Assembly: GCF_001194135.2 (NCBI RefSeq)
Contig: NC_068984.1
Coordinates: 140,480,915 to 140,544,914, forward strand
DNA length: 64,000 nt
Source: Octopus bimaculoides
Taxonomy: Eukaryota
Direction of reading: 5' to 3'
A program made the position numbers and the translations under genes. The notes under the pieces were generated by a model. That model was given only the letters and a program-made list of their open reading frames with translations, ran no database searches and had not been told where the DNA came from. Below are positions 3,098 to 62,340 of this stretch, piece by piece. Each line of letters opens with the position of its first letter. Position 1 is the first letter of the stretch.

Positions 3098-3246
3098 NNN
3101 NNNNNNNNNNNNNNNNNNNNNNNNNNNNNNNNNNNNNNNNNNNNNNNNNNNNNNNNNNNNNNNNNNNNNNNNNNNNNNNNNNNNNNNNNNNNNNNNNNNN
3201 NNNNNNNNNNNNNNNNNNNNNNNNNNNNNNNNNNATATACATACAT

Positions 3247-10853: not shown

Positions 10854-11916
10854 NNNNNNNNNNNNNNNNNNNNNNNNNNNNNNNNNNNNNNNNNNNNNNN
10901 NNNNNNNNNNNNNNNNNNNNNNNNNNNNNNNNNNNNNNNNNNNNNNNNNNNNNNNNNNNNNNNNNNNNNNNNNNNNNNNNNNNNNNNNNNNNNNNNNNNN
11001 NNNNNNNNNNNNNNNNNNNNNNNNNNNNNNNNNNNNNNNNNNNNNNNNNNNNNNNNNNNNNNNNNNNNNNNNNNNNNNNNNNNNNNNNNNNNNNNNNNNN
11101 NNNNNNNNNNNNNNNNNNNNNNNNNNNNNNNNNNNNNNNNNNNNNNNNNNNNNNNNNNNNNNNNNNNNNNNNNNNNNNNNNNNNNNNNNNNNNNNNNNNN
11201 NNNNNNNNNNNNNNNNNNNNNNNNNNNNNNNNNNNNNNNNNNNNNNNNNNNNNNNNNNNNNNNNNNNNNNNNNNNNNNNNNNNNNNNNNNNNNNNNNNNN
11301 NNNNNNNNNNNNNNNNNNNNNNNNNNNNNNNNNNNNNNNNNNNNNNNNNNNNNNNNNNNNNNNNNNNNNNNNNNNNNNNNNNNNNNNNNNNNNNNNNTAT
11401 ATATACATATATATGTACATACATATGTACATACATACATTCGTACTATACATACATAACATATATATAAATATGTGTGTGTGTGTGTGTATATAAAATG
11501 TTTATCCTTTCTGTCTCTGAAGATGACCAGATTAGATTAACTCTGTGTATCCTGAATAAATTATTAGGTCAATATTGGCATAAAATCTACAATTACAGTG
11601 GGTTCATGTAATAGCAGAATCGTGATTCAGTGAGGCTCTTGTTTTCCATTCCTTGCTCTTTACCTGTCTTGCAAATTACTTTGTGGCCTTATTAGTATTA
11701 GTGGCATAAGAAAAGTACCCACTATGCACTGCAAAGTGGTTGGCATTGGGAAGGACATCCAGCTGTAGAAACCATGCTCAGACTATCACTAAAGCTCAAT
11801 GTAGGCCTGCAGCTCATTGTCTCTGGACCATGTCATCATCATCATCGTTTAACGTCAGTAGGGTTAAAATGAATTTGTTTGAAATTTTAAGGCGTTGCCA
11901 TTATTTTGTCCAACCC

Positions 11917-32402: not shown

Positions 32403-33249
32403 TGTGGTCTGATCAATAAGCATTCAGACTGTTGCTATAGTAACAAAGCTAAAGCACAGAGAGTGAAGCCACTTGACATAAATTGACCTTGAACTCTACT
32501 ACGCATACACACTAAGTTTTAACATTCTAGCTCACTTCTGCTGTTTACAACAGTGCTTGGAAGGAAGGTGTGTATCGTGTGATTGTTGTATTGATCACGA
32601 CAGAGAAAGTTGAGCAGAAAATCTGCATCAAATTTTGCCAAAAGCTTGGTGATACCTACTCAGAGGCCTATGCAAAGTTTTCAAAAAGTTTTCATCATTC
32701 TCGACAAAGTCTAGGAGATCTTGTGCAACTGAAACCCAAGTGTCTTTTTTGGTCAGCTGAAAGCAGTTTTGACAGACAAGTATCTCATACCCAAATCTTC
32801 AGCCATAATGGACTGAACTGAACCATAATTAATCTGCACATCCTCTGATAACTCACAGAGGGTGATTTGATGATTTCCCCTCACAGTTGCATGTACATCT
32901 GTGATGTTTTTCTTAGTTTTGCTGGTTGCAGGTCTCCCAGAAAGTCTGTCAATATCAACATTTTTTCGGCCATCTTGGAAACGTCTGAACCACATGTACA
33001 CTAGTGTGCAGCTCATACACTCCTCTCCATACACTTTCTGCAACTTTGCATAGGCCTCTGTCATGGTCAATGTGATGATCACATGCTCCACACCTTCCTT
33101 CCAAGCACTGCTGTAAACAGCGGAAATGAGCTAGAATGTTAAAACTTTGTTCACATGCACAGCAGAGTTCAAGGTCAATCTTTCCCTACTGGCTTCACTC
33201 TGCGTGTTTTAGCTTCATTACTATGGCAACAGTCTGGATACTTATTGAT
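32403..33249. mobile_element. Fold-back mariner derivative made of two convergent 5' ends
   Basis: 32412-32679 is an inverted homologue of about 33040-33249. The minus strand encodes VYMWFRRFQDGR-SGRP and ENDENFLKT; the plus strand encodes EQKICIKFCQKLG. Confidence 0.85.
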
Positions 33250-35269
33250 ATATATATATATATATGCTGAGACACCCTTCGGTCATGACTGACCATGGGA
33301 TTGCACCTAGAAAGTTACCCTTCCAGGCACAAGTTCAGACAAGGTTGTTTATGGAAGACCAGCAGTTGCCCATGCATCCCCTCTCCATGCCACCAGTGTT
33401 ATCCAAGGGAAAGGCAAAGGCTGATACAGCTTGGCACCAGTGACATTGCAACTCATTTCTACAGCTGAGTTAACTGGAACAACATGAAATAAAGTGTCTT
33501 GCTCAAGAACACAGCACGTAGCCCGGTCTGGGATTTGNNNNNNNNNNNNNNNNNNNNNNNNNNNNNNNNNNNNNNNNNNNNNNNNNNNNNNNNNNNNNNN
33601 NNNNNNNNNNNNNNNNNNNNNNNNNNNNNNNNNNNNNNNNNNNNNNNNNNNNNNNNNNNNNNNNNNNNNNNNNNNNNNNNNNNNNNNNNNNNNNNNNNNN
33701 NNNNNNNNNNNNNNNNNNNNNNNNNNNNNNNNNNNNNNNNNNNNNNNNNNNNNNNNNNNNNNNNNNNNNNNNNNNNNNNNNNNNNNNNNNNNNNNNNNNN
33801 NNNNNNNNNNNNNNNNNNNNNNNNNNNNNNNNNNNNNNNNNNNNNNNNNNNNNNNNNNNNNNNNNNNNNNNNNNNNNNNNNNNNNNNNNNNNNNNNNNNN
33901 NNNNNNNNNNNNNNNNNNNNNNNNNNNNNNNNNNNNNNNNNNNNNNNNNNNNNNNNNNNNNNNNNNNNNNNNNNNNNNNNNNNNNNNNNNNNNNNNNNNN
34001 NNNNNNNNNNNNNNNNNNNNNNNNNNNNNNNNNNNNNNNNNNNNNNNNNNNNNNNNNNNNNNNNNNNNNNNNNNNNNNNNNNNNNNNNNNNNNNNNNNNN
34101 NNNNNNNNNNNNNNNNNNNNNNNNNNNNNNNNNNNNNNNNNNNNNNNNNNNNNNNNNNNNNNNNNNNNNNNNNNNNNNNNNNNNNNNNNNNNNNNNNNNN
34201 NNNNNNNNNNNNNNNNNNNNNNNNNNNNNNNNNNNNNNNNNNNNNNNNNNNNNNNNNNNNNNNNNNNNNNNNNNNNNNNNNNNNNNNNNNNNNNNNNNNN
34301 NNNNNNNNNNNNNNNNNNNNNNNNNNNNNNNNNNNNNNNNNNNNNNNNNNNNNNNNNNNNNNNNNNNNNNNNNNNNNNNNNNNNNNNNNNNNNNNNNNNN
34401 NNNNNNNNNNNNNNNNNNNNNNNNNNNNNNNNNNNNNNNNNNNNNNNNNNNNNNNNNNNNNNNNNNNNNNNNNNNNNNNNNNNNNNNNNNNNNNNNNNNN
34501 NNNNNNNNNNNNNNNTATATATATACACACATATATGTATATATACATTTATAGACATATACATATGCATAAAAATATATAATTGTGTGGATACATGTAC
34601 ATACTGTACACACACATACATACATACATACATACATACATGCACACACATATACATGCCATATATGAACAGACACATTCACACAAATTTAAACAGAAAT
34701 ACATCCATACCCACACATAAACAAGCACACACACATACATACACAGGTACACACATCTGCACTCACATACATGTCCCTCTCTCACTTATGCACCCACGCA
34801 CACACACACACACACACACACACATGTATGTATGCATGTCACTATGAGTCTATGATACACGCATAGACTCTGAGATATACATACATATACATACACACGT
34901 TTATATAACTTTGTATCCCTTTTACGTGGCGAAATCACTTACACTTGCAGAATTCAAAAGACAAGATGAAGTAAAGCAAAAGATTCTATTGTATATCTTC
35001 ATAAATATAAATATCTTTTAGTCAGAATATCACATTAGATCCTAACCATACTATATAAACACAATATTTATACATATTTATACATATATTTATATGTATA
35101 CTACATCTATTGTATAATACGTACACAAAGAATTATCAACTATATATATATATACATATATATAATATAATACTATATAATATACTAAAATATATTATAA
35201 CTAAATATTTGCAATAAAAAAGAAAAAAAGACATCAAAAATAAAGTGTACAACAACAATAAGAGCAACA

Positions 35270-35444
35270 ATGGGTTTTACACAATTTCTAAAGGTTTGCC
35301 TTTTTTTCATGTTTAATATAAACTGCTCCCTTGTTTATGCTCGAATAAGTTTTCAAAAGGACCAGAGGATTGATTATGTGTTCCCCCCACTGATTGAGAA
35401 ATCTGTTGATTCTAGAATTCCTGAAGGACATCTAAGACCACTCG
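35270..35444 (+). CDS. JmjC gene exon 1 (signal peptide to EGHLRPL, phase 1)
   Basis: ATG at 35270; donor ctcg|gtaaga; 175 nt. Confidence 0.88.
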
Positions 35445-38400
35445 GTAAGAAGATCTCTTCGTTGAAATTTGAATGAATGAACTTTAAAGCTCATAAATTA
35501 GTATTAATTAGTATTAATCAGTCAATCAATTAATTAATTGACGCAATTATTTATTTGTTATTTTCTCATTTTTATTTTTTTTTACTCTGTATATTGTTTT
35601 CATTTTTGTCTAAATCTCCTTATCGTTGATGTTTAAATACCTGATCAGCCCTTATCATGAAAACCTACGACCAAATACATTCTAGCCTCAGTCGTCACTT
35701 TTTGCTGAATTTCATCTGTATTTACAATCTGAGTTCAAATTCTGCCAAAGTCAATTTATAAAAGACGCAGCGCATATGCTAGGACTCAATAACCTCCTAA
35801 GCAGACCTGGTGCTGATATGAGTAGAATTTGGGAACCAGTATTAAGAAAAGATACAAAAATAGTAGGTTTATAAGTCCTAAAATTCACTCTATAATTGCC
35901 CATAGGTATATAGCATAGTGGTTAAGAGCACGGGCTACTAACCCTAAAATTCAGGGTTCAACCCCAGAATAAATAATAATAAGCACAGGAGTGGCTGTGT
36001 GGTAAGTAGCTTGCTTACCAACCACATGGTTCCGGGTTCAGTCCCATTGCGTGACATCTTGGGCTAGTGTCTTCTACTATAGCCTCAGGCCAACCTAAGC
36101 CTTGTGAGTGGATTTGGTAGAGGGAAACTGAAAGAAGACCGTCGTATATATATGTATAAATATGTATGTGTGTGTGTGTGTTTGTGTGTCTGTGTTTGTC
36201 CCCCTAGCATTGCTTGACAACCAGTTTGGCAAAAGAGACGGATAAACTTACAAAGAATAAGTCCTGGGGTCAATTTGCTCGACTAAAGGTGGTGCTCCAG
36301 CATGGCTGCAGTCAAATGATTGAAACAAGTAAAAAAAAAAAATACCTTGGTATTATTATTAGGAATGAGAACAGAGTACCCCAGTTGGGGACACCTGATG
36401 AAGGCTGGAGAGTACATCAGCCAAAACATTGTGATAACAACAAACAAGATGAGAACACATATCCGTCGAATGTGAATATTGTACATAATTCCTCATTTCT
36501 AAAATATAGAACATTGAGTCAACTTTGTCTTTCATCCTCTCTGGTCAGTGAAATAAATACCAGTCTAGCACTGGGAGTCGATGTTATCAACTAGTACCCC
36601 TCATTCTACCAAAATATTTCAGGCCATAAACCTATAGTAGAAAGGATTATTATTATCATTATTGTTAAAGCAATTAAGGTGATGAGCTGGCAGATTTGTT
36701 AGCATGCCGGGTAAAATGCTTACTAGCAGTTTATCCGTCTTTATGTTCTGAGTTCAAATTCAGCTGAGGTCAATTTCACCTTTTATCTTTTCTGGGTGGA
36801 TAAAATAAGTGCCAGTTGAACACTGGGGTCAATGTAATCATCTCATCCCTGCTCCCCCAAAATTGCTGCCCTTGTGGTAAAATTTGAAACCATTATTGTT
36901 AAAGCGATTGGCTGACAGAATTGTTAGCACAGCAGACAAAGTGCTTTGCAACATTTTGACTGTCTTTCCATTCCAAAGTCGACTTTGCTTTTCATCCTTT
37001 CAGGGTCGATAAATTAAGTACCAGCTATACACTGTGGTCAATAAAATTGACTAGACCCTCCACCAATTTCAGGCCTTGTACCTATAGTGAAAATTATTAT
37101 TATTATTATTATTAAGGTGGTGAGGTGGCAGAATCATTAGCATGCTGGACAAAATGCTTGGTGGTATTTCACCTGTCGCTGCATTCTGAGTTCAAATTCC
37201 ACTGAGATCGACTTTACCTTTCATCCTTTCAGGATTGGTAAATTAAGTACCAGCGAAACACTAGGATTGATGTAATTGACTAGTCTCCTCCCCACAATTT
37301 TTGGCCGTTGTAACCAATAAAGAAAGGATTATTATTATTATCATTATTATTATTATTATTATCATTATTATTATTATTTTCTCAGGTTTTGTTGGAGCTC
37401 CTGGAGTCTTGCATGCGTAGCGAGCTTACTACCTGCAGCCTACGGTACCATACTATCCATTCTTTTCAGCTCTCTAATACTTTCCTGATTATTCTGGCCG
37501 TGCCAAGGAGGCAAACCTTTTGTAACTGTTCTACTGGGCACTCTATTCCAATTTCCTTTATATTCCTCTTGATGAATATAAGAACGAATTAAATTAAGCT
37601 GGTGTGTGTGGAAGTGAAGCCTTACGGCAGCATACATGTAATTATATTTCATACACATATGATAATGTTTTCAATCATATTTTCTAGGGTTTCAGCGACA
37701 CCCTGATGGCAAAGTAAAAGAAACAAAAGGAATGCCCAATCCGGAATCATTCTACAAATACATCCAAGACAACCAGCCTGTAATGATGTTAGGAGCAATG
37801 AAGAATGTCCCAATAGCTAAAACATGGGAAAAAGATGATTACTTAAAGGAAAAGTAAGTGACCATTTTCTTTTCAAATTTTCCTAGATGATGAGAGGTTT
37901 TGGATCCGATACTTTGGATATGTGGTTAGAATGATGCAGGGAAGAATCACAAGACAGATTCTTCAAGCTGAGCTAACTGCCAAAGGACCTAGTAGTTGTT
38001 TTTGTTGTTGGCACTCCATTGCTTATGACGTCGAGGGTTCCAGTTGATCCGATCAACGGAACAGCCTGCTTGTGAAATTAACGTGCAAGTGGCATAGCAC
38101 TCCACAGACACGTGTACCCTTAACATAGTTCTCGGGGATATTCAGCGTGACACAGTGTGACAAGGCTGACCCTTTGAAATACTGGCACAACAGAAACAGG
38201 AAGTAAGAGTGAGAGAAAGTTGTGGTGAAAGAGTACAGCAGGGTTCGCCACCATCCCCTGCCGGAGCCTCGTGGAGCTTTAGGTGTTTTTGCTCAATAAA
38301 CACTCACAACGCCCGGTCTGGGAATTGAAACTGCGATCCTACGACCGCGAGTCCACTGCCCTAACCACTAGGCCATTGTGCCTCCACAAGGACCTAGTAG

Positions 38401-41086
38401 TAGACCCAGAACATACATACATACATACCTTGTTGTTGGTGTTGAAATTCCATTGAAGGAGTCTGGAATCTAGATTAGAAACTGACTCTTTCTCTGTTGG
38501 CAAGAAATCTTGAAATAAAACTAAACAATGACATACATATTTCTATAATTATCTCATTTCTCTTATTTGGATTCAATTTTGTCAGGTATGGTAATATATC
38601 TGTGCCTGTAAGTGTGCGGAAACAACAATTTCCAGGTAAAGTGAGAATCGTTCAAATGAAATTCAAGAAATTCCTTCTTGAGTACATGTACGAAGACTGG
38701 TACCTTGCAACGACCATTCCGCTTCTAATGGCTAGTGAACTAACTGTGAGTTATAGATATGTTCTTTTTTCCTCCTCTTTTTCTCTTGCTCTCTTGTTTG
38801 TTGTGTCCCCTTCTTTTTTTTTTTCACTCTATATTCTCAATCTATCATTCCTTTTCTCATATACATACATAGATACATACATACATAAATACATACATGC
38901 CAAGAATTTCTTTCTTCAAGGCAGTGCCCCAGCATGGCCACAGTATAATGACTGAAACAAGTAAATATATATATAAAAAGGATAAACGTCGCCCTTTCAA
39001 AGTCTAGCCAGGATCATGGGCCCAGTTTCCCGGTTTCTATGGCGTATGTACTCCCCCCAGCTGGACAGGACGCCAGTCCATCGCAGAGTTACTCAAGAAA
39101 CAGGAAGAAAGAGCGAGAGAAAGTTGGGGCAAAAGAGTACAACAGGGGTCCCCCCCCCCCCCACTGCCGGAGCCTTGTGGAGCTTTCAGGTGTTTTTGCT
39201 CAATAAACACACACAACGTCCGGTCTGGGAATCGAAGCCGCGATCCTCCGACTGCGAGTCTGCTGCCCTAACCACTGGGCCATATATATAATGGGAGGCA
39301 AGGTTCACGATATCACCTGAATATTGCCTTCTCCCACTAGTTTTTGTTCTTTGTGTTGTTTCCGGCTCCACTGCATTCAGATTACTCTATTAAATGTAAT
39401 GATTACTTATTCACATTGTTTTAAATTAATCATGCATTGTCTTATAACCATCAAGATTTCAATGATATGATAGTTTATCTTTAACCCTTTCATTACTGCA
39501 TTTATTTTGAGATGCTCTGTCAGGTTTCTTTTAATTACTTTAAATATAACAAAGAATTTAGAAAAATAACTTAGTTATCATTCAGCTAGTGTTAGGAACA
39601 TAAATTGTGACTAAGGTTTGATGGAAGATTTTAATTCAAAACTTATGAAATCTAGACATCTGTACTCAGAGCCAGAGGCAGTTTCAGGTGAGTTGGTATT
39701 GAAAGGGTTAAGAATTGTTTCTCTATTATATATTTTAACCCTTTTGTTACCATATTTCTGTTGAGATTCTCTGTGTTTCTTTCAATTACTTTAAATATAA
39801 CAAAGAATTTAGTAAAATAACTTAGTTATCATTCAGCTAGTGTTAGGAACATAAATTGTGACTAAGGTTTGATGGAAGATTTTAATTCAAAACTTATGAA
39901 ATCTAGACATCTGTACTCAGAGCCAGAGGCAGTTTCAGGTGGGTTGGTATCGAAAGGGTTAAGAATTGTTTCTCTATTATATATTTTAACCCTTTTGTTA
40001 CCATATTTCTGTTGAGATGCTCTGTATTTCTTTCAATTACTTTAAAGATAACAAAGAATTTAGTAAAATAACTAAGTTATCATTCAGCTAGTGTTAGGAA
40101 CACAAATTGTGACTAAGGTTGGTATTGAAAAGGTTAAGAATTATTTCTCTAAACTGTGACTAAGTTTTGATGGAAAATTTTAATTCAAAACTTATGAAAA
40201 CAAGACATTTGTACTACAGAGCCAGAGCCGGTTTCAGCTGGGTGGGTAACGAAAGGGTTAAAATGACATTGTAGGAAAGGTGTAAGAGGCTGGATCTGAC
40301 TGGTTTGAACATAAAACTGGTAGAATATATTTGAGCTGGATATGGTCAGTTTGAATGCTAAAGGGTTAATTTCATATTTATAATAATCTTCATTTAAATA
40401 TTTTAGATTCCTCAATGTCTCAGTTGTGGATCTTATTTTCACCGTCTGCTTGAGTCTGAGTTATGGATTAGCAGTGGTTTTGCCAACACCCAGCTACACA
40501 GTCATTCCGACCATATTCTACACTGCTTGCAGTTTGGACGTCGGGATTTTATTCTCATGAAAAAGAAATACAAGAAAAACTTCGAATTTGTGGAAGAGGT
40601 TTGTAAGGCTGTTGCCTACATTACTTTCTCTCTGCTCTCTCTCTCTCTCTCTCTGCTCTCTCTCTCTCTCCCTGCTCTCTCTCTCCCTGCTCTCTCTCTC
40701 CCTACTCTCTCTCTCCCTCTCTTTTATCATTTGACATCCGTGTTCCATATTAGCATGGGATGGAGGTTCCACAGGATCTCACTAGCTTGTCGGGATGGGC
40801 GGCTGTGCTGGTTTTCAGGGTATAGATGGCAGCTGTAGTGGTTGGTGTTAGGAAGAGCAAAAAATTAAAGAATATATATGTATATATATATATATATACA
40901 ATGTAACCTCGTGGGCATCGGTACCATTTTCCTCTTTCTCCGTTCTTCCATTCTCCGAACTTTCCATCTTTCCGACGAAGGGCTACGCTCGAAACGTCAT
41001 ACACTCTCTCTTTCCTTTCCTGAGCGTCCAATAATACTATCCATATCACGTCCTCACTTTGTTGTTTTTTTGTTATTGTTTTTTTG

Positions 41087-41122
<36 letters not shown>

Positions 41123-41301
41123 CCAGTATCGCCTGACTGGCCCTCGTGCTGGTGGAATGTAAAAAGCACCCACTACACTCTCAGGGCTCAGGGTTCAGTC
41201 CCACTGCGTGGCACCTTGGGCATGTGTCTTCCACTATAGCCTCGGGCTGACCAAAGCCTTGTGAGTGGATTTGGTAGACGGAAAATGAAAGAAGCCCGTC
41301 G

Positions 41302-41354
<53 letters not shown>

Positions 41355-44300
41355 ATGTTTGTGTGTCTGTGTTTGTCCCCCATCACTTGACAACCGATGC
41401 TGGTGTGTTTACGTCCCCGTAACTTAGCAGTTTGGCAACGTCGTTGTCGTCGTCATCATCATCACCATCATCATCATATGTCAAAAATAAACATAAGCCT
41501 AGATCTTTACATTTGTGAGATGGAGGGGTCAATTACATTGACCACCAACCCCACGGCACTGGCTCAGGTGCTTTTGCATGAGGTGCCAGCACAGAGGAAA
41601 TTGGTAGAATCAGTAGGGCAGAATTTATTGTAACTTTGTGTACAAATATGTTCAAATCTCACCAAAGTCAACTTTACCATTTAGCCTTTTGAGGAACTGG
41701 AGGAAATTTCAGAACATCTGATTGGGTGCCTTGTTGTATTTGCTCCAGTTCATTAGGTTCCGAGTTCAAATCCCACCTTGGTCTATGTGAACAGTAGACT
41801 TCATTCATTAATACCACTGCCTGGCACCGTGGATGCTTTTAGAAGGGTCCCTTCTGTTGCAAGAATTCAGAGTTAGTCTCTAGTTTGAGGATACTTTCTC
41901 CCTCTTTCTCACTACTCTTGGAGGGCTCTGTCAAGGGTCACGGGCACTAACTTCACACCTGAGTGACAGTTAAAGGGATAAAAAATACCCATCCTTGTTC
42001 CAGCTTCTCCTTATATGGAATGAACAAATAAATGAAAATAAATAAATAAATAAATAGGTAGAGGCATGGCTGTGTGGTTAAGAAACTCACTCTGCAGCCA
42101 TGAGGTGCTGGGTTCAGTCCCACTGTGCAGCACCTTGGACAATATTTTCTATTATAGCCCTGGGCCAACTAATGCCTTGTGAGTGGATTTGATAGGTGTA
42201 AACTGTGAAGAAGCCTGTTGTGCGTGTGTGTGTGTGTGTGCCTTTGTATTTGTTTCTCACCAACACTTGACAACTGGTGGTAGTTTGTGTACATCCCCGT
42301 AACTTAGTGGTTTGGCAAAAGTGCCTAATAGAATAAATGCCAAACTCTAAAAAAAAAAAACCCCCAAAAATAAGTACTGGTGGTTGATTTATTTAACTAA
42401 AACCCTTCAAGATGGCACCCCAGCACGGCCACAGTCCAGTGAGAGAAGCAAGTGAAAAAGTGAAAAGATAAATAAATAAAATAAAACAAAGCAAAATCAT
42501 GAATTTTTGTTTTTATTTTTCAGTATCCCACATCAATTTCTGGTCATTCTCCACTGGACATGAACAAAATAAACATGTTCAAAAATACCAACTTTGCAAA
42601 AACCCCATGGGTATATGCTAGTCTCTATGGTGGAGATTGTCTGTATATACCATCTGGTATGTATGCTGCATTATCTTACAAAACATTCATAAAACCCAGG
42701 AATGGATTAATCCTTTTTCTGAGTATTGGAATCTCAGTAACTACAATCTATATTTTGTGTCTTGAGAGAATCATTTACCCATTACCTCCCATAATTCTAT
42801 TAACTGGAATTTTTTTTATGAAACTTTGATTTCTAGCATAAAACAGCCTTAGAAACATGCTGAAATCATCAGAATAACATTTCAAATAACATTTCAAAAT
42901 AACATTTTAAATAGAAATAAGCAAGATATTGGGTTAAAAATTAGCAAACCTCATTTGAATATCAGAGAAATATACCTAGTAGATATAGCAAAAAGGTTAG
43001 ATATGTGTAAATATTGACAGATAATTACGAAATTTGTAACTTTTAAGTGATCTCATATGAGATCACTGGTAGGTAATGGGTTAAGCTAATTACAATACCA
43101 CATACACTGGTTCAAGATCACTCTTTACTGTTAGTCAATTGGTTTGATATCTAACCAACTAATCAATCATTTGTTTAATGAATTGGTTAAACAATCAACC
43201 AGTTATTTACATCATTTACATTTGATGGATATTTGTCCTCATCTTGTTTGTTGATAACACTATGTTTCAGCTGATATACCTCCTGGAATGTATTTCATAA
43301 TCTTTTGTTTACCATTTCGTGTCATTGGATGTATTATTATTTTACTCTCTTCCACAGAATACTTGCATCAAGTGAGATCTTACGGGAGAGCTATTTCCTA
43401 TACAATCCACTTTGCACCATCTACTCAGTTTGATCTGAGGGGTTGCTTTGGAGATGAAGTCCAAAAAACATTTAAACTTACAGATGCCAATTTCTTATGG
43501 ACATACACTAAAGGGCATAAGGTAAATTCTTTGATCTTTAATCATTAATCTTTAACTTGCTTCAGTCATTGAACTGTGGCCATGCTGGAGCACCACCTTT
43601 GACACACACATACATATATATACATATATATATACATATATACAACGGGCTTCTTTCAGTTTCCGTCTACCAAATCCACTCACAAGGCTTTGGTGGGCCC
43701 GAGGCTATAGTAGAAGACACTTGCCCAAGGTGCCACACAGTGAGACTGAACCTGGAACCATGTAGTTGGTAAGTAAGCTACTTACCACACAGCCACTCCT
43801 GCGCCTGATGATAAAAGATAATGATAATGATGATGATGATTGTGGTGGTGGTGGTGGTGGTGGTGCTGCTGCTGCTGCTGGTGGTGATGATGATAAATCA
43901 GAAATAAGTAGTAACTCACAAGTGTTGCCCAGAAGAGAAAGAAGCAATCTTTTTAGTTTGGTGTGTTTAACTATAAATGCCTTCATATAACGTTAACAGT
44001 AGGTCACTAACATTGGTAGCAATACCATTTTACCATTTTTGCTTCTGATTTTTCTTTCCAGCAACTATCTAATGTAAAATTCAGCCCAGAAAGTTTCCAG
44101 AAACTTCTACAACTTTTGCTAGGAGCTAAGGATAGACTTTCTTTTCACCAGTTTGAACATTTTTATGACATGGCTTTCAAGCAAGTGAGTATGATTTTTT
44201 TAAACCCTTTTGTTACCCTATTTCATAGGGACCATAAATTAATATTAAATGTTGAGGGAAAGTTTTAATCTAGCTCACTTTAATCTATTTGTTATATTTC

Positions 44301-45857
44301 ATTTCAACATACACACCACACAATGGCTTTCCTTCAATCCATTTCGAAAATAATAAAGAATTGTTTTTCTCAAGCTGGTATTTGGAAAATAAATTAATAT
44401 GAGATTTTAAGGAAAGGTTTTAATTTAGATTACTTTAACCCTTTTGTTACCATATTCCTTCTGAAACACAATGCCTTTGTTCCAATTCATTTTGAAAATA
44501 ATAAAGAATTTAATGAAAAAGCTTTATCCTTCTTGAGCTAGTATTTGGAACATAAATTGATATGAAATACTTAGGGAAGGTTTTAATTTAGATCCCTTCA
44601 AAACACAAAGTTTGATTTGTAGAACCAAGGATGATCTCAGGCAGCTCAGAATCTTGAGGATCAAATGCTTTGAGCAAGCTATATTCTTAAGGATAATTAG
44701 ATATCTATTAAAGTTCCAAAACATAAATTGTAATGCTGCTGCACTGAAACTATAGAAAATAACAACCCTTATTATTAACCCTTTAGCTTTTAAACCGGTC
44801 ATATCTGGTTCAAATATGCTATGCTTTTGCAGTTAAGAGGTTCAACCCCCATGTTTTTACCACATAACACATTCTAATGCATTTACACATATAGATAGAT
44901 GCATATTACAAGGGTCATTATGCCAATAATAAACACACACACTGGTTCTATTTCACTTCTTTTACTATTATTAGTCAATTTGTTAACATTTAACCAATTA
45001 ATCAATCGATTGTTTGATTACTAGTTTGATTAATCAGCTAGGTTTGTCACATTTCTTTTGTTACTGTTTGTGACATCATTAATGACATGTCCTCTTGACT
45101 CCAATAGGTCTAAAGCTGACCTTGAATAGAGAGGTCATGTCAGTGGTGAGGTTGCGAGTAGTGATAAAAGGACTTTGATAAACCTAGCAGAGTGATTGAT
45201 AAAACGAATGCTTAATCAAACAATTGATTAGTCAGCTGGTTAAACGTTAACCAATTAATTGATTATTGACAGCAGTGGCATTAACTCGTATCTGAGTAGT
45301 TAATCTGTCATGAGTGATTGATCCTCTTCATCCTGATGGGTGCGAAGGAGGCCAGTGCTTGAGATGGCTGTTCAGGCCAGGAGCAGTATAGAAGGGCCAG
45401 GGGACATTTATTGCAGGGGGTGGGGTGGCATAGAACAAGGAAGTATGGGTCACTTTTTGTGTCTTTGATATCTGATCTCTGTCTCTTAGTGTCTGTTATT
45501 TTCCATCTGGTCTGTTCTCCTGATGATGAGTACGCGTTTATTATTGGCATAATGACGGTCCTTAGATACAACAAAATTTGCTTTAATGCACAAGTTCACA
45601 CCAAGAATCTTGCAAACCAAATACTGAATTGTGATTGAAAAAAATTTTATTCCAAAACTTTAAATATACCAAATTATGCTCTGTGTATTTTACAGGACAA
45701 CAAAAGACCTCCTGCATTGGAAGTGTTCTGGAAGATGGCAAAAAAAGACAAAGATTATTTGACTCGTCATGAAATCGATAATCTTTCTCCTCGCAAACTG
45801 ATGGTTGTTGTGAAAGTTTTCAATTCTAGATTCTCAAAAAAGAAAGAAGAACTTTAA
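35270..45857 (+). CDS. 8-exon secretory/ER-luminal JmjC (cupin_8) 2-oxoglutarate oxygenase-like protein, 424 aa. join(35270..35444,37688..37853,38586..38745,40407..40598,42524..42656,43358..43521,44062..44184,45696..45857)
   Basis: Manual splicing gives 1275 nt with no internal stop. All introns are GT-AG and the phases match (1,2,0,0,1,0,0). Motifs: hydrophobic N-terminus MGFTQFLKVCLFFMFNINCSLVYA, EGHLRPLG, P-F-Y-PV-GA-W-DDYLKEKYG, LWISSG-TQLHSHSD, GDCLYIP-HQVRS, and C-terminal KKKEEL*. ATG context is acaATGg. Confidence 0.92.
35985..36330 (+). mobile_element. SINE family A (tRNA-like head, internal (TA)n/(TG)n); other copies near 3.9, 7.3, 12.5, 12.9, 28.1, 30.7, 41.2, 42.1, 43.6, 60.3 and 63.3 kb
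   Basis: Recurrent gtggtaag...ggttcagtccca...gccttgtgagtggatttggtagacggaaactgaaagaag...gctccagcatggc. Confidence 0.85.
36680..37330 (+). mobile_element. Three head-to-tail SINE family B copies; others near 15.0-15.3, 24.1, 25.8, 26.6, 31.4, 48.4, 51.9, 58.6, 62.8 and 63.7 kb
   Basis: Recurrent gagctggcagaa-gttagc...gagttcaaatt...gtcgactttgcctttcatcctttc...taagtaccag. Confidence 0.85.
37688..37853 (+). CDS. JmjC gene exon 2 (GFQRHPDG...WEKDDYLKEK)
   Basis: Acceptor tttctag|gg; donor gaaaa|gtaagt; 166 nt. Confidence 0.92.
37997..38387 (-). mobile_element. Full-length tRNA-derived SINE (family C) with TSD, in JmjC intron 2
   Basis: 14-bp TSD aaggacctagtagt at 37983-37996 and 38388-38401; tRNA-like head and (CAA)n tail. 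Confidence 0.9.
38586..38745 (+). CDS. JmjC gene exon 3 (YGNISVPV...LMASELT)
   Basis: Acceptor ttttgtcag|g; donor act|gtgagt; 160 nt. Confidence 0.92.
39481..40261. mobile_element. Tandem array of about 3 copies of a second piggyBac-like MITE (ttaacccttt...aaagggttaa), period about 251-254 bp
   Basis: Units start at 39481, 39735 and 39986 and are near-identical, including the spacer gaattgtttctctattatatatt. Confidence 0.85.
40407..40598 (+). CDS. JmjC gene exon 4 (IPQCLSCG...LWISSGFANTQLHSHSDHILHCLQFGRRDF...FVEE)
   Basis: Acceptor ttttag|att; donor gag|gtttgt; 192 nt open frame carrying the first metal-ligand motif. Confidence 0.92.
42524..42656 (+). CDS. JmjC gene exon 5 (YPTSISGHSPLD...GGDCLYIPS)
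   Basis: Acceptor tttttcag|tat; donor tctg|gtatgt; 133 nt. Confidence 0.93.
43358..43521 (+). CDS. JmjC gene exon 6 (EYLHQVRSYGR...WTYTKGHK)
   Basis: Acceptor ttccacag|aa; donor aag|gtaaat; 164 nt; carries the distal His. Confidence 0.93.
44062..44184 (+). CDS. JmjC gene exon 7 (QLSNVKF...FEHFYDMAFKQ)
   Basis: Acceptor tttctttccag|caa; donor caa|gtgagt; 123 nt, phase 0-0. Confidence 0.88.
44200..44830. mobile_element. Degenerate piggyBac-like MITE family 2 copies plus a family 1 fragment, in JmjC intron 7
   Basis: aacccttttgttacc starts at ~44203 and ~44437; ttaaccctttagc at ~44775. Confidence 0.6.
44920..45300. mobile_element. AT-rich inverted-repeat family; related copies at ~43105-43260 and ~50600-50890
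   Basis: Shared start tgccaataataaac-cacac-cactggtt and self-complementary aattaatcaatcgattg arms. Confidence 0.55.
45696..45857 (+). CDS. JmjC gene exon 8 (DNKRPP...SKKKEEL*), with a degenerate EF-hand-like segment and KEEL
   Basis: Acceptor attttacag|gac; TAA at 45855-45857. Confidence 0.9.
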   Translation, partial: DNKRPPALEVFWKMAKKDKDYLTRHEIDNLSPRKLMVVVKVFNSRFSKKKEEL

Positions 45858-47411: not shown

Positions 47412-48759
47412 NNNNNNNNNNNNNNNNNNNNNNNNNNNNNNNNNNNNNNNNNNNNNNNNNNNNNNNNNNNNNNNNNNNNNNNNNNNNNNNNNNNNNNNNN
47501 NNNNNNNNNNNNNNNNNNNNNNNNNNNNNNNNNNNNNNNNNNNNNNNNNNNNNNNNNNNNNNNNNNNNNNNNNNNNNNNNNNNNNNNNNNNNNNNNNNNN
47601 NNNNNNNNNNNNNNNNNNNNNNNNNNNNNNNNNNNNNNNNNNNNNNNNNNNNNNNNNNNNNNNNNNNNNNNNNNNNNNNNNNNNNNNNNNNNNNNNNNNN
47701 NNNNNNNNNNNNNNNNNNNNNNNNNNNNNNNNNNNNNNNNNNNNNNNNNNNNNNNNNNNNNNNNNNNNNNNNNNNNNNNNNNNNNNNNNNNNNNNNNNNN
47801 NNNNNNNNNNNNNNNNNNNNNNNNNNNNNNNNNNNNNNNNNNNNNNNNNNNNNNNNNNNNNNNNNNNNNNNNNNNNNNNNNNNNNNNNNNNNNNNNNNNN
47901 NNNNNNNNNNNNNNNNNNNNNNNNNNNNNNNNNNNNNNNNNNNNNNNNNNNNNNNNNNNNNNNNNNNNNNNNNNNNNNNNNNNNNNNNNNNNNNNNNNNN
48001 NNNNNNNNNNNNNNNNNNNNNNNNNNNNNNNNNNNNNNNNNNNNNNNNNNNNNNNNNNNNNNNNNNNNNNNNNNNNNNNNNNNNNNNNNNNNNNNNNNNN
48101 NNNNNNNNNNNNNNNNNNNNNNNNNNNNNNNNNNNNNNNNNNNNNNNNNNNNNNNNNNNNNNNNNNNNNNNNNNNNNNNNNNNNNNNNNNNNNNNNNNNN
48201 NNNNNNNNNNNNNNNNNNNNNNNNNNNNNNNNNNNNNNNNNTCTGTGGTATTGAGCAGAATATTTGCTGTAGCCCATCTTTTATACCAAGACAAAACAAT
48301 GATAACACTTCCAATCAATTAAGATCAGAAGCCATGAGAGCCACTGCCTGGTACTGCATCAGGGCATTTATTATTATTATTATTTTTATTATTTTTTTTT
48401 TTTATTAAGAAGGTGGTGAGCTGCCAGAATCATTGGAGTGCCTGGCAAAATACCTAGCAGCATTTCATCTGTTTATACATTCTGAGTTTCAGTTCTACCG
48501 AAGTCGACTTTGCCTTTCATCCTTTCAGGGTTGATAAAATAAGTACCAGTCAAACACTGGGGTTGATACAATCGACTTAGTCCCTTCCCTTGAACTTGTT
48601 GGCCTTGTGCCAAAATTTGAAATCATCGTCATTATTATTAATGTCATTTCACTTCTCAGAGCTCTTGATTTCGCTTGCTCTGACTAATTCTGTTAGAGAA
48701 GACCATAATCTGTTGTCAAGGGTCTCAAAGAGTTTTCTTTCATGATACTTAACATCAAA

Positions 48760-60219: not shown

Positions 60220-61189
60220 TTGTGTTTAGTTGTAATCCTCTATCTTCTGCTATAGTTCTGGGGGTAACCAAGGCCTTGTGAGTGAATTTTGTGAACAGAA
60301 ACTGTATGGAAGCACATGTCTTGTGAATAAATATATACGTGTGTGTTTGTCGTCCTCCACTGCTTGATTGCTGGTATTGGTTTGTTTATGTATCTGTAAC
60401 TTAGTTTGGTAATAAAGTACTAAAGTTGAAAGAAAAAAAAAGTACTGGGGTTGATTTGTTTGACTAACCCTACAATGTGGTGCTCCAGCATGACTGCAGT
60501 CCGATGACTGAAACAATACGAAAGAAGATAAATTTCCAGACAGTTCAATCTTTTCAACAAATAATGAACTTTGACCTTTCCTAAAAATGACCCATAATTT
60601 TATTAGATAAAAGGGATAAACATCTAATATTTTCTCCACTGTCAGTTACTAGGAACACCTTCTTTTGAAATAGAATATATAGATATCTGTTATCAAACGA
60701 AACCATTCTAACTATTAAAAAAGAAACAAAAAAACCAGTCCAGCGAGGTGCAGACGTAGGTGCGTGTGGCTTTTCAAAGATTTACTTCACAACCACAAGG
60801 TTTCGAGTTTGGTTCTATTGCATGGCACAATGACTTCATGAGAAAGTGTCTCCTACTGTAGCCTCATGCTGTCCAATGTCATGTCAGTGGAACTAAGGAC
60901 TTAGAAACTGAGAAGACGCGTGTGTGTTTACAAACGCACACACACATCATGCCAGCATGGAAAACAGGCATTACATAACGATGTCGATTATATATATATA
61001 TATATATATNNNNNNNNNNNNNNNNNNNNNNNNNNNNNNNNNNNNNNNNNNNNNNNNNNNNNNNNNNNNNNNNNNNNNNNNNNNNNNNNNNNNNNNNNNN
61101 NNNNNNNNNACTTGTGTGTGTGTATACGTCTGTATATACACTTGTGTGTGTGTATACGTATGTATATACATTGTATACGTGTGTATATG

Positions 61190-61573: not shown

Positions 61574-62340
61574 ACATACACGCGTTTGTGTGTATTCGTA
61601 TGTATATACATCTGTGTGTGTGTATTCGTATGTATATACACGCGTGTGTGTATACGTATGTATATACACGCGTGTGTATACGTATGTATATACACTTGTG
61701 TGTTTGTGTATACGTATGTATATGTACTTGTGTGTGTGTGTATACGTATGTATATGTACTTGTGTGTGTGTGTATACGTATGCATATGCACTTGTGTATG
61801 TGTGTATACATATGCATATGCACTTGTGTATGTGTGTATGCATATGCACTTGTNNNNNNNNNNNNNNNNNNNNNNNNNNNNNNNNNNNNNNNNNNNNNNN
61901 NNNNNNNNNNNNNNNNNNNNNNNNNNNNNNNNNNNNNNNNNNNNNNNNNNNNNNNNNNNNNNNNNNNNNNNNNNNNNNNNNNNNNNNNNNNNNNNNNNNN
62001 NNNNNNNNNNNNNNNNNNNNNNNNNNNNNNNNNNNNNNNNNNNNNNNNNNNNNNNNNNNATATACTCTGTGTGTGTGCATATACATTTGTGTGTGTGTGT
62101 GCTTATAGACTTGTGTGTGTATGTATACATATACACGTATGTGTGTATACATATACACTTGATGTGTGTGCGTGCATACATATGTATATACACTTGTGTG
62201 TGTATGTATATACACTTGTGTGTGTATGTATATACACTTGTGTGTGTATGTATATACACTTGTGTGTGTATGTATATACACTTGTGTGTGTATGCATATA
62301 CACTTGTGTGTGTGTATGCATATACACTTGCATGTGTGTG
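61574..62340. repeat. GT/AT minisatellite with ~22-26-bp units such as cttgtgtgtgtatgtatataca, spanning a gap
   Basis: Tandem units visible directly. Confidence 0.9.

What the first reader, a model, noticed from the sequence alone, without database searches (positions are those of the whole stretch)
40497..43371. ER-luminal JmjC protein with an H-x-H...H (3-His) metal site instead of H-x-D/E...H
Seen: exon 4 encodes LWISSGFANTQLHSHSDHILHCLQFGRR, with His codons at 40497-40499 and 40503-40505, and exon 6 encodes the distal His (YLHQVRS). Established: JmjC 2OG oxygenases use a 2-His-1-carboxylate triad. Aligned by eye to FIH (T196, H199, D201, N205, K214, H279), this protein keeps Thr and both His but has D201->H, N205->I and K214->R. 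A 3-His triad is typical of thiol dioxygenase-type cupins. Inference: this may be an enzyme with different chemistry or metal, or a metal-binding pseudo-enzyme, acting in the ER. The Asp two residues further on (HSHSD) could alternatively supply the carboxylate.
Basis: partly seen in the sequence, partly recalled or inferred. Interest (0 to 1): 0.78.

Follow-up and report, generated by a model that had tools for sequence, protein, structure and literature searches.

The report
Octopus ER JmjC protein with three-histidine site
This octopus gene encodes an endoplasmic-reticulum-resident relative of the JMJD5 protein hydroxylase in which the usual metal-binding aspartate is a histidine; the change is shared by molluscs, ribbon worms and a flatworm but not by sea stars, amphioxus, sponges or placozoans, so it offers an untested natural experiment on how these enzymes hold their iron.

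Summary
An 8-exon gene on the + strand (35270-45857) encodes a 424-aa protein. It has a signal peptide, a JmjC/Cupin_8 domain reading H198-S-H200...H279, and a C-terminal KEEL.

It is not JMJD8, the known ER JmjC protein with HxH (BLASTP E=6; hhalign probability 1.7%). It belongs to the uncharacterised "secreted JMJD5-like" family of Iyer et al. 2010: a GHxxxhG motif, conserved cysteines and a JMJD5-like core. I find that most full-length members end in a KDEL-type signal.

In 231 aligned family sequences the triad is H-D-H in 137 and H-H-H in 61. Every named H-H-H protein comes from a mollusc, nemertean or flatworm. The closest orthologues from hemichordate, echinoderms, amphioxus, sponge and placozoan keep H-x-D.

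H200 occupies the column of JMJD5 D323. The JMJD5 2OG-binding residues are kept (Y153, W187, T195, R213 for Lys, V281).

The best reading is a conserved 3-His metal and 2OG site, probably still a luminal protein hydroxylase. A pseudo-enzyme or a change of metal is not excluded. D202 predates the switch, so it is unlikely to be the replacement ligand.

This is a new variant of a known kind, of moderate interest.

The parts
35270..35444 (+). Exon 1. It holds the ATG, the hydrophobic signal-peptide-like N-terminus (MGFTQFLKVCLFFMFNINCSLVYA) and the conserved FPP...IPEGHLRPLG segment, which is the GHxxxhG motif (G53 at 35426-35428). The exon ends in phase 1.
   Evidence: tblastn with the O. sinensis protein, splice sites, a 9-aa hydrophobic window of 2.4, and G53, H54 and G59 invariant in alignment A1.
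37688..37853 (+). Exon 2: the N-terminal part of the Cupin_8/JmjC domain.
   Evidence: and Pfam Cupin_8 covering residues 79-297.
38586..38745 (+). Exon 3. It contains Y153 (TAC at 38701-38703), the equivalent of the JMJD5 2OG ligand Y272, and the N117-I-S sequon.
40407..40598 (+). Exon 4: DSBH strands I-IV. Key codons are C171, C174, W187 (40464-66), T195 (40488-90), H198 (40497-99), H200 (40503-05, in the Asp position), D202 (40509-11), H203 (40512-14), I204 (40515-17), H206 (40521-23), C207 (40524-26) and R213 (40542-44, in the Lys position).
   Evidence: Direct reading, alignments to JMJD5 and family column counts.
42524..42656 (+). Exon 5: the insert between strands IV and V, and strand VII with G268-D-C270-LYIP.
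43358..43521 (+). Exon 6. It holds the distal His H279 (CAT at 43366-43368) in YLHQVRSYGR, V281 (the equivalent of JMJD5 V402), C305, and the start of the C-terminal domain.
44062..44184 (+). Exon 7: the first helix-loop-helix of the EF-hand-like C-terminal domain.
45696..45857 (+). Exon 8: the second helix-loop-helix, the terminal helix, the K-E-E-L ER-retrieval motif (45843-45854) and the TAA stop (45855-45857).
   Evidence: KEEL fits the PROSITE ER_TARGET pattern, and 99 of 121 full-length family representatives end in x-E-[LFI].

Best explanation
The gene is the octopus orthologue of an old metazoan family of soluble, ER-resident JMJD5-like JmjC oxygenases. This is the bioinformatically defined 'secreted JMJD5-like family' of Iyer et al. 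2010.

Shown:
- The domain order is signal peptide, conserved GHLRPLG segment, a JMJD5-like double-stranded beta-helix with conserved cysteines, an EF-hand-like helical C-terminal domain, and KEEL.
- In the spiralian branch of this orthologue group (molluscs, nemerteans, a flatworm) the Asp of the 2-His-1-carboxylate triad is His. The site reads H198-x-H200...H279, while the other residues that hold 2OG in JMJD5 are kept.
- The nearest orthologues outside Spiralia keep HxD, so the ancestral state was Asp. The His needs only one base change (GAY to CAY) and has since been retained.

Inferred:
- The protein still binds a divalent metal through three His and still binds 2OG, with K or R213, T or S195 and Y153 holding the C5 carboxylate.
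- It most probably still acts as a 2OG-dependent hydroxylase on proteins passing through the ER lumen.
- The acidic residue at 202, inherited from the HxD ancestor, may act as a second-shell charge partner that made the D-to-H change tolerable.
For: Identity:
- Pfam Cupin_8 at 6.5e-20.
- The best solved relatives are JMJD5, at 4e-08 with the single sequence and 7.7e-16 with the profile.
- The AF2 model (pLDDT 76.8, with the active-site strands at 77-93) superposes on JMJD5 with TM 0.79-0.85.
- The GHxxxhG motif and the conserved Cys174, 207, 270 and 305 match the family description in PMC2938197.

ER residence:
- Hydrophobic N-terminus plus KEEL.
- 70 of 121 full-length representatives fit the PROSITE ER_TARGET pattern, and 99 of 121 end in xE[LFI].

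Conservation and polarity of the switch:
- H-D-H in 137, H-H-H in 61 and degenerate triads in 12 of the 231 aligned sequences, where all three columns are present.
- Named H-H-H proteins come only from cephalopods, gastropods, bivalves, nemerteans and Macrostomum.
- Glandiceps, Anneissia, Asterias, Branchiostoma, Oscarella and Trichoplax have H-[YF]-D.
- An NJ tree built without the triad columns gives 99% bootstrap for the clade that holds every HxH sequence.

2OG pocket:
- JMJD5 uses K336, S318 and Y272 for the C5 carboxylate, and W310, N327, L329 and V402 line the pocket (PMC9712658).
- In the 61 HxH proteins the equivalent positions are K or R in 58 of 61, S or T in 61 of 61, Y in 55 of 59, W in 61 of 61, and V, M or I in 61 of 61.

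Precedents that the carboxylate is dispensable:
- The ER-luminal AspH works with two His ligands only (abstracts of PMC10947486 and PMC13168262).
- One report describes 2OG- and Fe-dependent activity of HxH JMJD8 that is lost in the H179A/H181A mutant (PMC9820096).
Against: - No biochemical data exist for any member of the family; literature searches were empty.
- Replacing the triad Asp by His abolished activity in human prolyl 4-hydroxylase (D414H; PMC2767507).
- Yeo et al. suspected that HxH JMJD8 is not a hydroxylase or demethylase.
- The same clade contains members with destroyed triads: lamprey R-A-L...F, and P0020, P0022, P0025, P0037 and P0045. A non-catalytic function can therefore sustain these proteins.
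- Cephalopods additionally lack the pocket Asn (I204) and have Arg for Lys.
- Strict monophyly of HxH is not supported in my NJ bootstrap: 5.5%, or 24% with the lamprey included. One origin is therefore plausible but not shown.
- I could not inspect model coordinates, so ligand geometry rests on alignment only.
Confidence: 0.55

Rival explanations
1. It is a pseudo-enzyme. The D-to-H change, with K to R and N to I in cephalopods, ended oxygenase catalysis. The protein persists as a metal-binding or purely protein-binding ER factor, for example a chaperone-like or lectin-like binder of former substrates.
For: - P4H D414H is inactive.
- Degenerate triads occur repeatedly in the same clade and still carry signal peptides and HDEL/RDEL/KTEL tails: lamprey P0031 and P0020, P0022, P0025, P0037, P0045. 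A non-catalytic role is therefore viable in this family.
- Yeo et al. made the same suggestion for JMJD8.
Against: - All three His and the 2OG-contacting residues are almost invariant in 61 HxH sequences spanning several phyla. That is the pattern of a working site and contrasts with the truly degenerate members.
- A protein that only needs to bind a partner would not be expected to keep Y153, S/T195, K/R213 and W187 together.
Confidence: 0.22
2. It is an active enzyme with changed chemistry or metal. The more positive 3-His site binds another metal (Ni, Zn, Cu, Mn) or catalyses a 2OG-independent dioxygenation of the thiol-dioxygenase or diketone-dioxygenase type.
For: - 3-His centres are typical of CDO, ADO, Dke1 and gentisate dioxygenase, and they alter substrate ligation and metal promiscuity (PMC4019311).
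- The site is unusually His-rich: H198, H200, H203, H206 and H279. H206 replaces the pocket Leu of JMJD5.
Against: - The 2OG C5-carboxylate clamp is retained.
- There is no sequence relationship to CDO or ADO families.
- H203 and H206 are also present in the HxD orthologues, so they are not part of a new site that arose with H200.
Confidence: 0.12
3. The carboxylate is supplied by D202 (HSHSD) and H200 is not a ligand, so the site is still 2-His-1-carboxylate with shifted register.
For: Position 202 is Asp or Glu in 59 of 61 HxH proteins.
Against: - The same Asp is present in the nearest HxD orthologues (H-Y-D-A-D-H in Asterias, Anneissia, Glandiceps, Branchiostoma, Oscarella, Trichoplax). It predates the switch and coexists with the true ligand D200.
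- It is His in Argonauta and Asn in P0003.
- In all alignments it falls on JMJD5 Q325, which is not a ligand.
- In the AF2 model it lies in the turn after strand II.
- A second-shell role remains possible.
Confidence: 0.08
4. It is simply the octopus orthologue of JMJD8, the already described ER-luminal HxH JmjC protein, so nothing is new.
For: Signal peptide, ER location and HxH...H are shared with JMJD8. hhalign puts H198, H200, R213 and H279 on JMJD8 H179, H181, K193 and H248.
Against: - BLASTP against a genuine JMJD8 gives E=6.
- The profile-profile probability is 1.7%, against 7.7e-16 to JMJD5.
- The motif context differs: PFHWHGPG...GRKRW in JMJD8 versus LHSHSDHILHC..GRR here.
- JMJD8 is about 260-270 aa and lacks the GHxxxhG motif, the C-terminal domain and the KDEL tail.
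- Iyer et al. list the two families separately.
Confidence: 0.02

Closest known systems
'Secreted JMJD5-like family' (Iyer, Abhiman, de Souza, Aravind 2010, NAR 38:5261, Table 1; PMC2938197)
   Same: It shares the signal peptide, the unique N-terminal GHxxxhG motif (GHLRPLG here), the conserved cysteines, the JMJD5-like JmjC core, and a distribution in animals. None of the named hits came from arthropods or nematodes.
   Different: - The main text of that paper predicts action on cell-surface proteins and mentions neither a KDEL-type tail nor an HxH variant. Its supplement is not held.
- Here most members carry ER-retrieval tails, and one spiralian orthologue group has His for the triad Asp.
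- Lampreys retain a degenerate copy, so the loss in vertebrates is not complete.
Human JMJD5/KDM8 (arginyl C-3 hydroxylase; PDB 6F4N, 4GJZ and others)
   Same: It is the best sequence and fold match. The metal His pair and the 2OG residues Y272, W310, S318, K336 and V402 are matched by Y153, W187, T195, R213 and V281.
   Different: - JMJD5 is nuclear/cytosolic with HxD and has no signal peptide, disulfide cysteines, C-terminal EF-hand-like domain or KDEL.
- Identity is about 20%.
- D323 becomes H, N327 becomes I, and L329 becomes H.
JMJD8 (vertebrate ER-luminal JmjC-only protein)
   Same: It is an ER-luminal JmjC-only protein with an HxH...H site. The question of whether such a site is catalytic is open for both.
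   Different: There is no specific sequence relationship (E=6; hhalign 1.7%). The motif context, size and architecture all differ. The two HxH sites are convergent.
AspH (ER-luminal aspartyl/asparaginyl beta-hydroxylase) and, from my memory rather than a test here, P4H-TM
   Same: Both are 2OG oxygenases that work in the ER lumen. AspH lacks the triad carboxylate and is still active. From memory, P4H-TM combines an oxygenase domain with a luminal EF-hand domain.
   Different: They belong to other DSBH subfamilies, not JmjC. AspH has two His ligands rather than three.
3-His cupin dioxygenases (CDO, ADO, Dke1, gentisate dioxygenase)
   Same: Three-His facial metal site on a cupin/DSBH scaffold.
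   Different: They are 2OG-independent and unrelated at the sequence level (no Pfam hit). The protein here keeps a 2OG pocket.

Membership tests
JmjC / Cupin_8 superfamily | Significant match to the Cupin_8/JmjC profile and a DSBH fold | tested here: met
   Pfam PF13621 at 6.5e-20 (72.5 bits against a cut-off of 27.4), and JmjC_2 at 22.6 bits against 22. Foldseek to JMJD5 gives E 1.5e-16 and TM 0.79-0.85.
Fe(II)/2OG oxygenase, canonical active site | 2-His-1-carboxylate triad H-x-D/E...H | tested here: not met
   The carboxylate position is His (H200, CAT at 40503-05) in every alignment.
Fe(II)/2OG oxygenase, canonical active site | Residues binding the 2OG C5 carboxylate (Lys plus two hydroxyl side chains in JmjC hydroxylases) | tested here: met
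   Y153, T195 and R213 (a conservative Lys to Arg change; Lys in bivalves and nemerteans), plus W187 and V281.
Fe(II)/2OG oxygenase, canonical active site | Metal binding and 2OG turnover | not testable with these tools
   This needs recombinant protein.
Secreted JMJD5-like family (Iyer et al. 2010) | N-terminal GHxxxhG motif | tested here: met
   G53-H-L-R-P-L-G59 is invariant in A1 and present in most of the 160 representatives.
Secreted JMJD5-like family (Iyer et al. 2010) | Signal peptide and conserved (disulfide) cysteines | tested here: met
   There is a hydrophobic N-terminus, and C174, C207, C270 and C305 are conserved family-wide. Disulfide pairing itself was not tested.
Secreted JMJD5-like family (Iyer et al. 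2010) | Closest characterised relative is JMJD5 | tested here: met
JMJD8 | Specific sequence similarity to JMJD8 orthologues | tested here: not met
   BLASTP E=6 and hhalign probability 1.7%.
JMJD8 | HxH...H site and ER signal peptide | tested here: met
   Both are shared, but in a different motif context. The resemblance is convergent.
Soluble ER-resident proteins | Signal peptide plus C-terminal [KRHQSA]-[DENQ]-E-L | tested here: met
   KEEL at 45843-45854 and KDEL in O. sinensis. 70 of 121 family representatives fit the pattern. Localisation itself was not tested.
3-His thiol dioxygenase cupins (CDO/ADO) | Match to CDO_I or PCO_ADO profiles, and no 2OG pocket | tested here: not met
   No such Pfam hit even at E<=1, and the 2OG pocket residues are retained.
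EF-hand pair (C-terminal domain, residues ~335-420) | Helix-loop-helix pair with canonical Ca-binding loops | tested here: inconclusive
   - The AF2 model (pLDDT 83.8) shows two helix-loop-strand-helix units.
- The Foldseek top hits are nearly all EF-hand proteins, but with E>0.6.
- Pfam EF-hand is sub-threshold in the hemichordate orthologue (17.8 bits against 25.4) and absent in octopus.

The most novel reading that the evidence does not exclude
Spiralian animals carry a natural 3-His JmjC oxygenase in the ER that is still 2OG-dependent and catalytically active, or that has shifted metal or reaction. It sits beside HxD orthologues of 30-40% identity in deuterostome invertebrates, sponge and placozoan. 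This would be an evolutionary D-to-H swap held for hundreds of millions of years. It would show directly what the facial-triad carboxylate is for. It would also open a whole unstudied family of luminal protein hydroxylases that is missing from the standard model animals.
Probability: 0.4. Interest if true: 0.65.

Novelty: new variant of a known kind. Interest (0 to 1): 0.48.

Why it matters
The 2-His-1-carboxylate triad is treated as the signature of 2OG oxygenases. Whether a 3-His JmjC site can work is disputed for human JMJD8, with one positive report against earlier doubt.

This family offers a cleaner test. Orthologues differ at the ligand position (His in molluscs, nemerteans and a flatworm; Asp in sea star, crinoid, acorn worm, amphioxus, sponge and placozoan) while the rest of the pocket is kept. 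Reciprocal swaps can therefore be interpreted.

The family itself is widespread in animals but seems never to have been studied experimentally. Its absence from mouse, fly and worm is the probable reason. It has a signal peptide, a KDEL-type tail and an EF-hand-like domain. If it is active, it implies an unknown protein hydroxylation in the early secretory pathway of many invertebrates.

Tried and rejected
1. JMJD8 orthology. I recalled the human JMJD8 sequence as a lead and confirmed it with a database search (99% identity to chimpanzee JMJD8). I then compared real JMJD8 proteins with the octopus protein and profile and rejected orthology.

2. Sequencing error or private variant. Rejected on the strength of 61 H-H-H homologues.

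3. D202 as a compensating novelty. Rejected as a novelty because the nearest HxD orthologues have it too. A second-shell role is kept open.

4. A co-varying 'package' of D to H, N to I and K to R. Rejected, because the three changes have different taxonomic ranges.

5. Strict monophyly of HxH. An NJ bootstrap with the triad columns removed supports the enclosing clade (99%) but not HxH alone (5.5%). Lamprey and two unnamed HYD sequences (P0016, P0024) fall inside it. No ML tree software was available.

6. Reading ligand geometry from the AF2 model. The tool returns no coordinates, so distances could not be measured.

7. C-terminal domain. Pfam finds nothing in octopus, and Foldseek gives only non-significant EF-hand hits.

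8. Literature on any characterised member. The searches 'JMJD5-like', 'demethylase 8-like', locus tags, and JmjC plus KDEL found nothing relevant. The supplement of Iyer et al. is not held.

9. tRNA scan of the window: none found.

Full report
**Observation**

The window is cephalopod genomic DNA. The encoded protein is 95-96% identical to an Octopus sinensis protein that NCBI names "bifunctional peptidase and arginyl-hydroxylase JMJD5-like".

Direct reading shows CAC at 40497-40499 and CAT at 40503-40505 in ...LWISSGFANTQLHSHSDHILHCLQFGRR.... The distal His is CAT at 43366-43368 in YLHQVRS.

Using the O. sinensis protein as a guide and reading the splice sites, I built an 8-exon model on the + strand:
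- 35270-35444
- 37688-37853
- 38586-38745
- 40407-40598
- 42524-42656
- 43358-43521
- 44062-44184
- 45696-45857

All introns are GT...AG. The CDS is 1275 nt and encodes 424 aa ending in KEEL and a stop. No assembly gap lies inside the gene.

**What it is**

Pfam gives Cupin_8 at 6.5e-20, with JmjC_2 just above its cut-off.

Against all PDB sequences the best relatives are JMJD5 structures, at 4e-08 with the single sequence and 7.7e-16 with a profile of 11 molluscan sequences. JMJD7 and TYW5 follow.

An AlphaFold2 model (pLDDT 76.8, pTM 0.77; the strands carrying the triad score 77-93) matches JMJD5 best, with TM 0.79-0.85 normalised to JMJD5. JMJD7, TYW5 and FIH come next.

In both HMMER alignments H198, H200, I204, H206, R213, H279 and V281 fall on JMJD5 H321, D323, N327, L329, K336, H400 and V402. 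Y153, W187 and T195 fall on Y272, W310 and S318.

According to PMC9712658:
- H321, D323 and H400 bind the metal.
- K336, S318 and Y272 hold the 2OG C5 carboxylate. The FIH equivalents are K214, T196 and Y145.
- W310, N327, L329 and V402 line the pocket.

**Is this the known case, JMJD8?**

An ER-luminal JmjC protein with His in place of the triad Asp is already published:
- Yeo et al. 2017 (PMC5684140).
- Table 1 of Iyer et al. 2010 (PMC2938197).
- A 2022 paper reporting Fe- and 2OG-dependent demethylation of AKT1 that is lost in H179A/H181A (PMC9820096).

I fetched genuine JMJD8 proteins and compared them.
- BLASTP of the octopus protein against a 264-aa JMJD8 gives E=6.
- A profile-profile comparison of the molluscan alignment with a JMJD8 alignment gives probability 1.7%.
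- The motif context differs: PFHWHGPG...GRKRW in JMJD8 against LHSHSDHILHC..GRR here.
- JMJD8 has no GHxxxhG motif, no 130-aa C-terminal domain and no KDEL tail.

The gene is not JMJD8, and the two HxH sites are convergent.

**The family**

The same table of Iyer et al. lists a "secreted JMD5-like family". It is found in animals and described as lost in vertebrates, arthropods and nematodes. [quoted passage not shown]

The octopus protein has G53-H-L-R-P-L-G59, which is invariant in all 11 molluscan sequences.

A full HMMER scan of 1.84 billion representative proteins with the molluscan profile found 250 proteins at E<=1e-30. Column counts on the best 150 plus the first ten hits show the family signature:
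- A signal-peptide-like N-terminus in 88% of full-length representatives.
- GHxxxhG.
- Y153, W187, S/T195, H198, K213 and H279.
- Cys174, 207, 270 and 305.

In addition, 99 of 121 full-length representatives end in x-E-[LFI], and 70 fit the PROSITE ER_TARGET pattern (KDEL 17, RDEL 15, HDEL 12, HEEL 9, KEEL 7, and so on). The family is better described as ER-resident than as secreted. The main text of the 2010 paper does not say this.

I found no experimental paper on any member.

**Distribution of HxH**

Among 231 aligned family sequences, and counting those with all three triad columns present, the triad is H-D-H in 137, H-H-H in 61 and degenerate in 12.

Source names show the following.

| Triad | Taxa |
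|---|---|
| H-[SA]-H | Cephalopods: Octopus, Argonauta. Gastropods: Patella, Lottia, Haliotis, Littorina, Nucella, Aplysia, Pomacea, Babylonia, Batillaria, Plakobranchus. Bivalves: Pinctada, Mizuhopecten, Pecten, Crassostrea, Ostrea, Mercenaria, Mya, Dreissena, Tegillarca |
| H-Y-H | Nemerteans Tubulanus and Lineus; flatworm Macrostomum |
| H-x-H | Several unnamed metagenome or transcriptome sequences |
| H-Y-D | Closest relatives outside this set: hemichordate Glandiceps, crinoid Anneissia, sea star Asterias, amphioxus |
| H-F-D | Sponge Oscarella and Trichoplax |
| R-A-L...F (destroyed triad, HDEL tail kept) | Lampreys |

A neighbour-joining tree built without the triad and Lys columns gives 99% bootstrap (200 replicates) for a clade that contains every HxH sequence. 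That clade also holds the long-branched lamprey protein and two unnamed HYD sequences. Molluscs receive 72%. Strict HxH monophyly receives only 5.5%.

The ancestral state is therefore Asp. The His is derived within the spiralian side and has been kept across several phyla. Whether it arose once cannot be decided with this tree.

K213R occurs in gastropods and cephalopods only, and N204I in cephalopods only.

**The alternative ligand D202**

Position 202 is acidic in 59 of 61 HxH proteins. The nearest HxD orthologues read H-Y-D-A-D-H, so this Asp coexisted with the genuine ligand before the switch. It aligns to the non-ligand Q325 of JMJD5. It is His in Argonauta and Asn in another cephalopod-like sequence.

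It is thus unlikely to be a replacement ligand. A role as a pre-existing second-shell acid that offsets the extra positive charge of a 3-His site is a reasonable inference. I could not test it, because the model coordinates are not exposed.

H203 and H206 are likewise shared with the HxD orthologues.

**How it most likely works**

Shown:
- A secretory-pathway protein with an ER-retrieval tail.
- A JMJD5-like catalytic fold.
- Three invariant His at the ligand positions.
- A retained 2OG clamp. In the 61 HxH proteins this is S or T in 61, K or R in 58, Y in 55 of 59 and W in 61.

Inferred:
- It binds a divalent metal through three His and binds 2OG.
- It probably hydroxylates proteins in the ER lumen, by analogy with JMJD5 (arginyl), FIH (asparaginyl) and JMJD7 (lysyl).

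Points in favour of tolerance of the missing carboxylate:
- ER-luminal AspH is active with only two His ligands (abstracts).
- One report describes JMJD8 activity.

Points against:
- P4H D414H is inactive.
- Degenerate-triad members occur in this very clade, so non-catalytic survival is possible.
- A change of metal or chemistry is less likely, because the 2OG pocket is kept and there is no relationship to CDO or ADO. It is not excluded.

My estimates are:

| Reading | Probability |
|---|---|
| Active or at least cofactor-binding 3-His 2OG oxygenase | about 0.55 |
| Pseudo-enzyme | about 0.22 |
| Altered metal or chemistry | about 0.12 |
| D202 as ligand | about 0.08 |
| JMJD8 orthologue | about 0.02 |

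**C-terminal domain**

Residues ~335-420 were modelled alone (pLDDT 83.8). They form two helix-loop-short strand-helix units followed by a long helix.

The Foldseek top hits are almost all EF-hand proteins, but none is significant (E>0.6). Pfam EF-hand is sub-threshold in the hemichordate orthologue and absent in octopus. I call the domain EF-hand-like and probably degenerate in octopus.

**Novelty and verdict**

The fold, the family (as a computational entry) and the idea of an HxH JmjC protein in the ER are all known. What appears to be new:
- This other family carries HxH in a phylum-spanning spiralian group.
- HxD orthologues exist elsewhere.
- The family as a whole is KDEL-tailed.

This is a new variant of a known kind. 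Interest is moderate (0.48). It is a tidy natural experiment for a live question in 2OG-oxygenase chemistry, and an entry point to an unstudied family, but it is not a new kind of system.

Noticed in passing
P0031 / P0201-P0204 (lamprey proteins): Lampreys (Petromyzon, Lampetra, Lethenteron) keep a member of this family with GHLRPLG and an HDEL tail but a destroyed triad (R-A-L...F). The family is therefore not completely lost in vertebrates, and this copy looks like a pseudo-enzyme.
   Followed up: partly
P0020, P0022, P0025, P0037, P0045, P0065: Several unnamed relatives in the same clade have degenerate metal ligands (L-A-H, H-S-R...N, H-S-Q, N-Y-Y...Y, Q-Y-I...Y) while keeping signal peptides and xxEL tails. 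Loss of the catalytic site has happened repeatedly.
   Followed up: no
window 35426-35444 + 37688-37689 (G53-H-L-R-P-L-G59) and the preceding FPP...IP segment: The family-defining GHxxxhG segment is invariant in molluscs but is modelled with very low confidence (pLDDT 28-40 for residues 21-60). Its role is unknown. It could be a propeptide, a lid or an internal pseudo-substrate, and it contains a conserved Arg in this orthologue group.
   Followed up: no
window 44062-45854 (exons 7-8, residues ~335-424): The C-terminal domain folds like an EF-hand pair, but the octopus loops lack canonical Ca ligands. The hemichordate orthologue has a near-canonical loop (DKENNGYLTLNE; sub-threshold Pfam EF-hand_1).
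   Followed up: partly
family-wide: 99 of 121 full-length representatives of the so-called 'secreted' JMJD5-like family end in KDEL-like tetrapeptides (KDEL, RDEL, HDEL, HEEL, KEEL, HDEF...). This implies ER residence rather than secretion to the cell surface, contrary to the published prediction.
   Followed up: yes
window 32753-33091 (-): This ORF carries a Mos1-type transposase HTH domain (Pfam HTH_48, 30.7 bits, E 3.5e-07). It is a mariner-like transposon remnant about 2 kb upstream of the gene, next to an assembly gap.
   Followed up: partly
window 39524-40270 (intron 3) and 44194-44600 (intron 7): A 251-bp unit is repeated about three times in tandem at 95-98% identity in intron 3. More diverged copies (60-78%) of parts of the same element lie in intron 7. 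It is probably a SINE-like or satellite repeat.
   Followed up: partly
window 40620-40700: A CT-rich microsatellite (ctctctct...gctctc repeats) starts about 20 bases after the exon 4 donor site.
   Followed up: no
window 3098-3234, 5595-5995, 10854-11397, 33538-34515, 47412-48241, 61010-61109, 61854-62059 and five 10-N runs: There are many assembly gaps (N runs), mostly flanked by TA/CA-type microsatellites. None lies inside the gene.
   Followed up: yes
position 213 across orthologues: Arg instead of the 2OG-binding Lys occurs almost only in HxH proteins: 10 of the 11 cases among the 160 representatives. Within those it is confined to gastropods and cephalopods. Three relatives have Met there.
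   Followed up: partly
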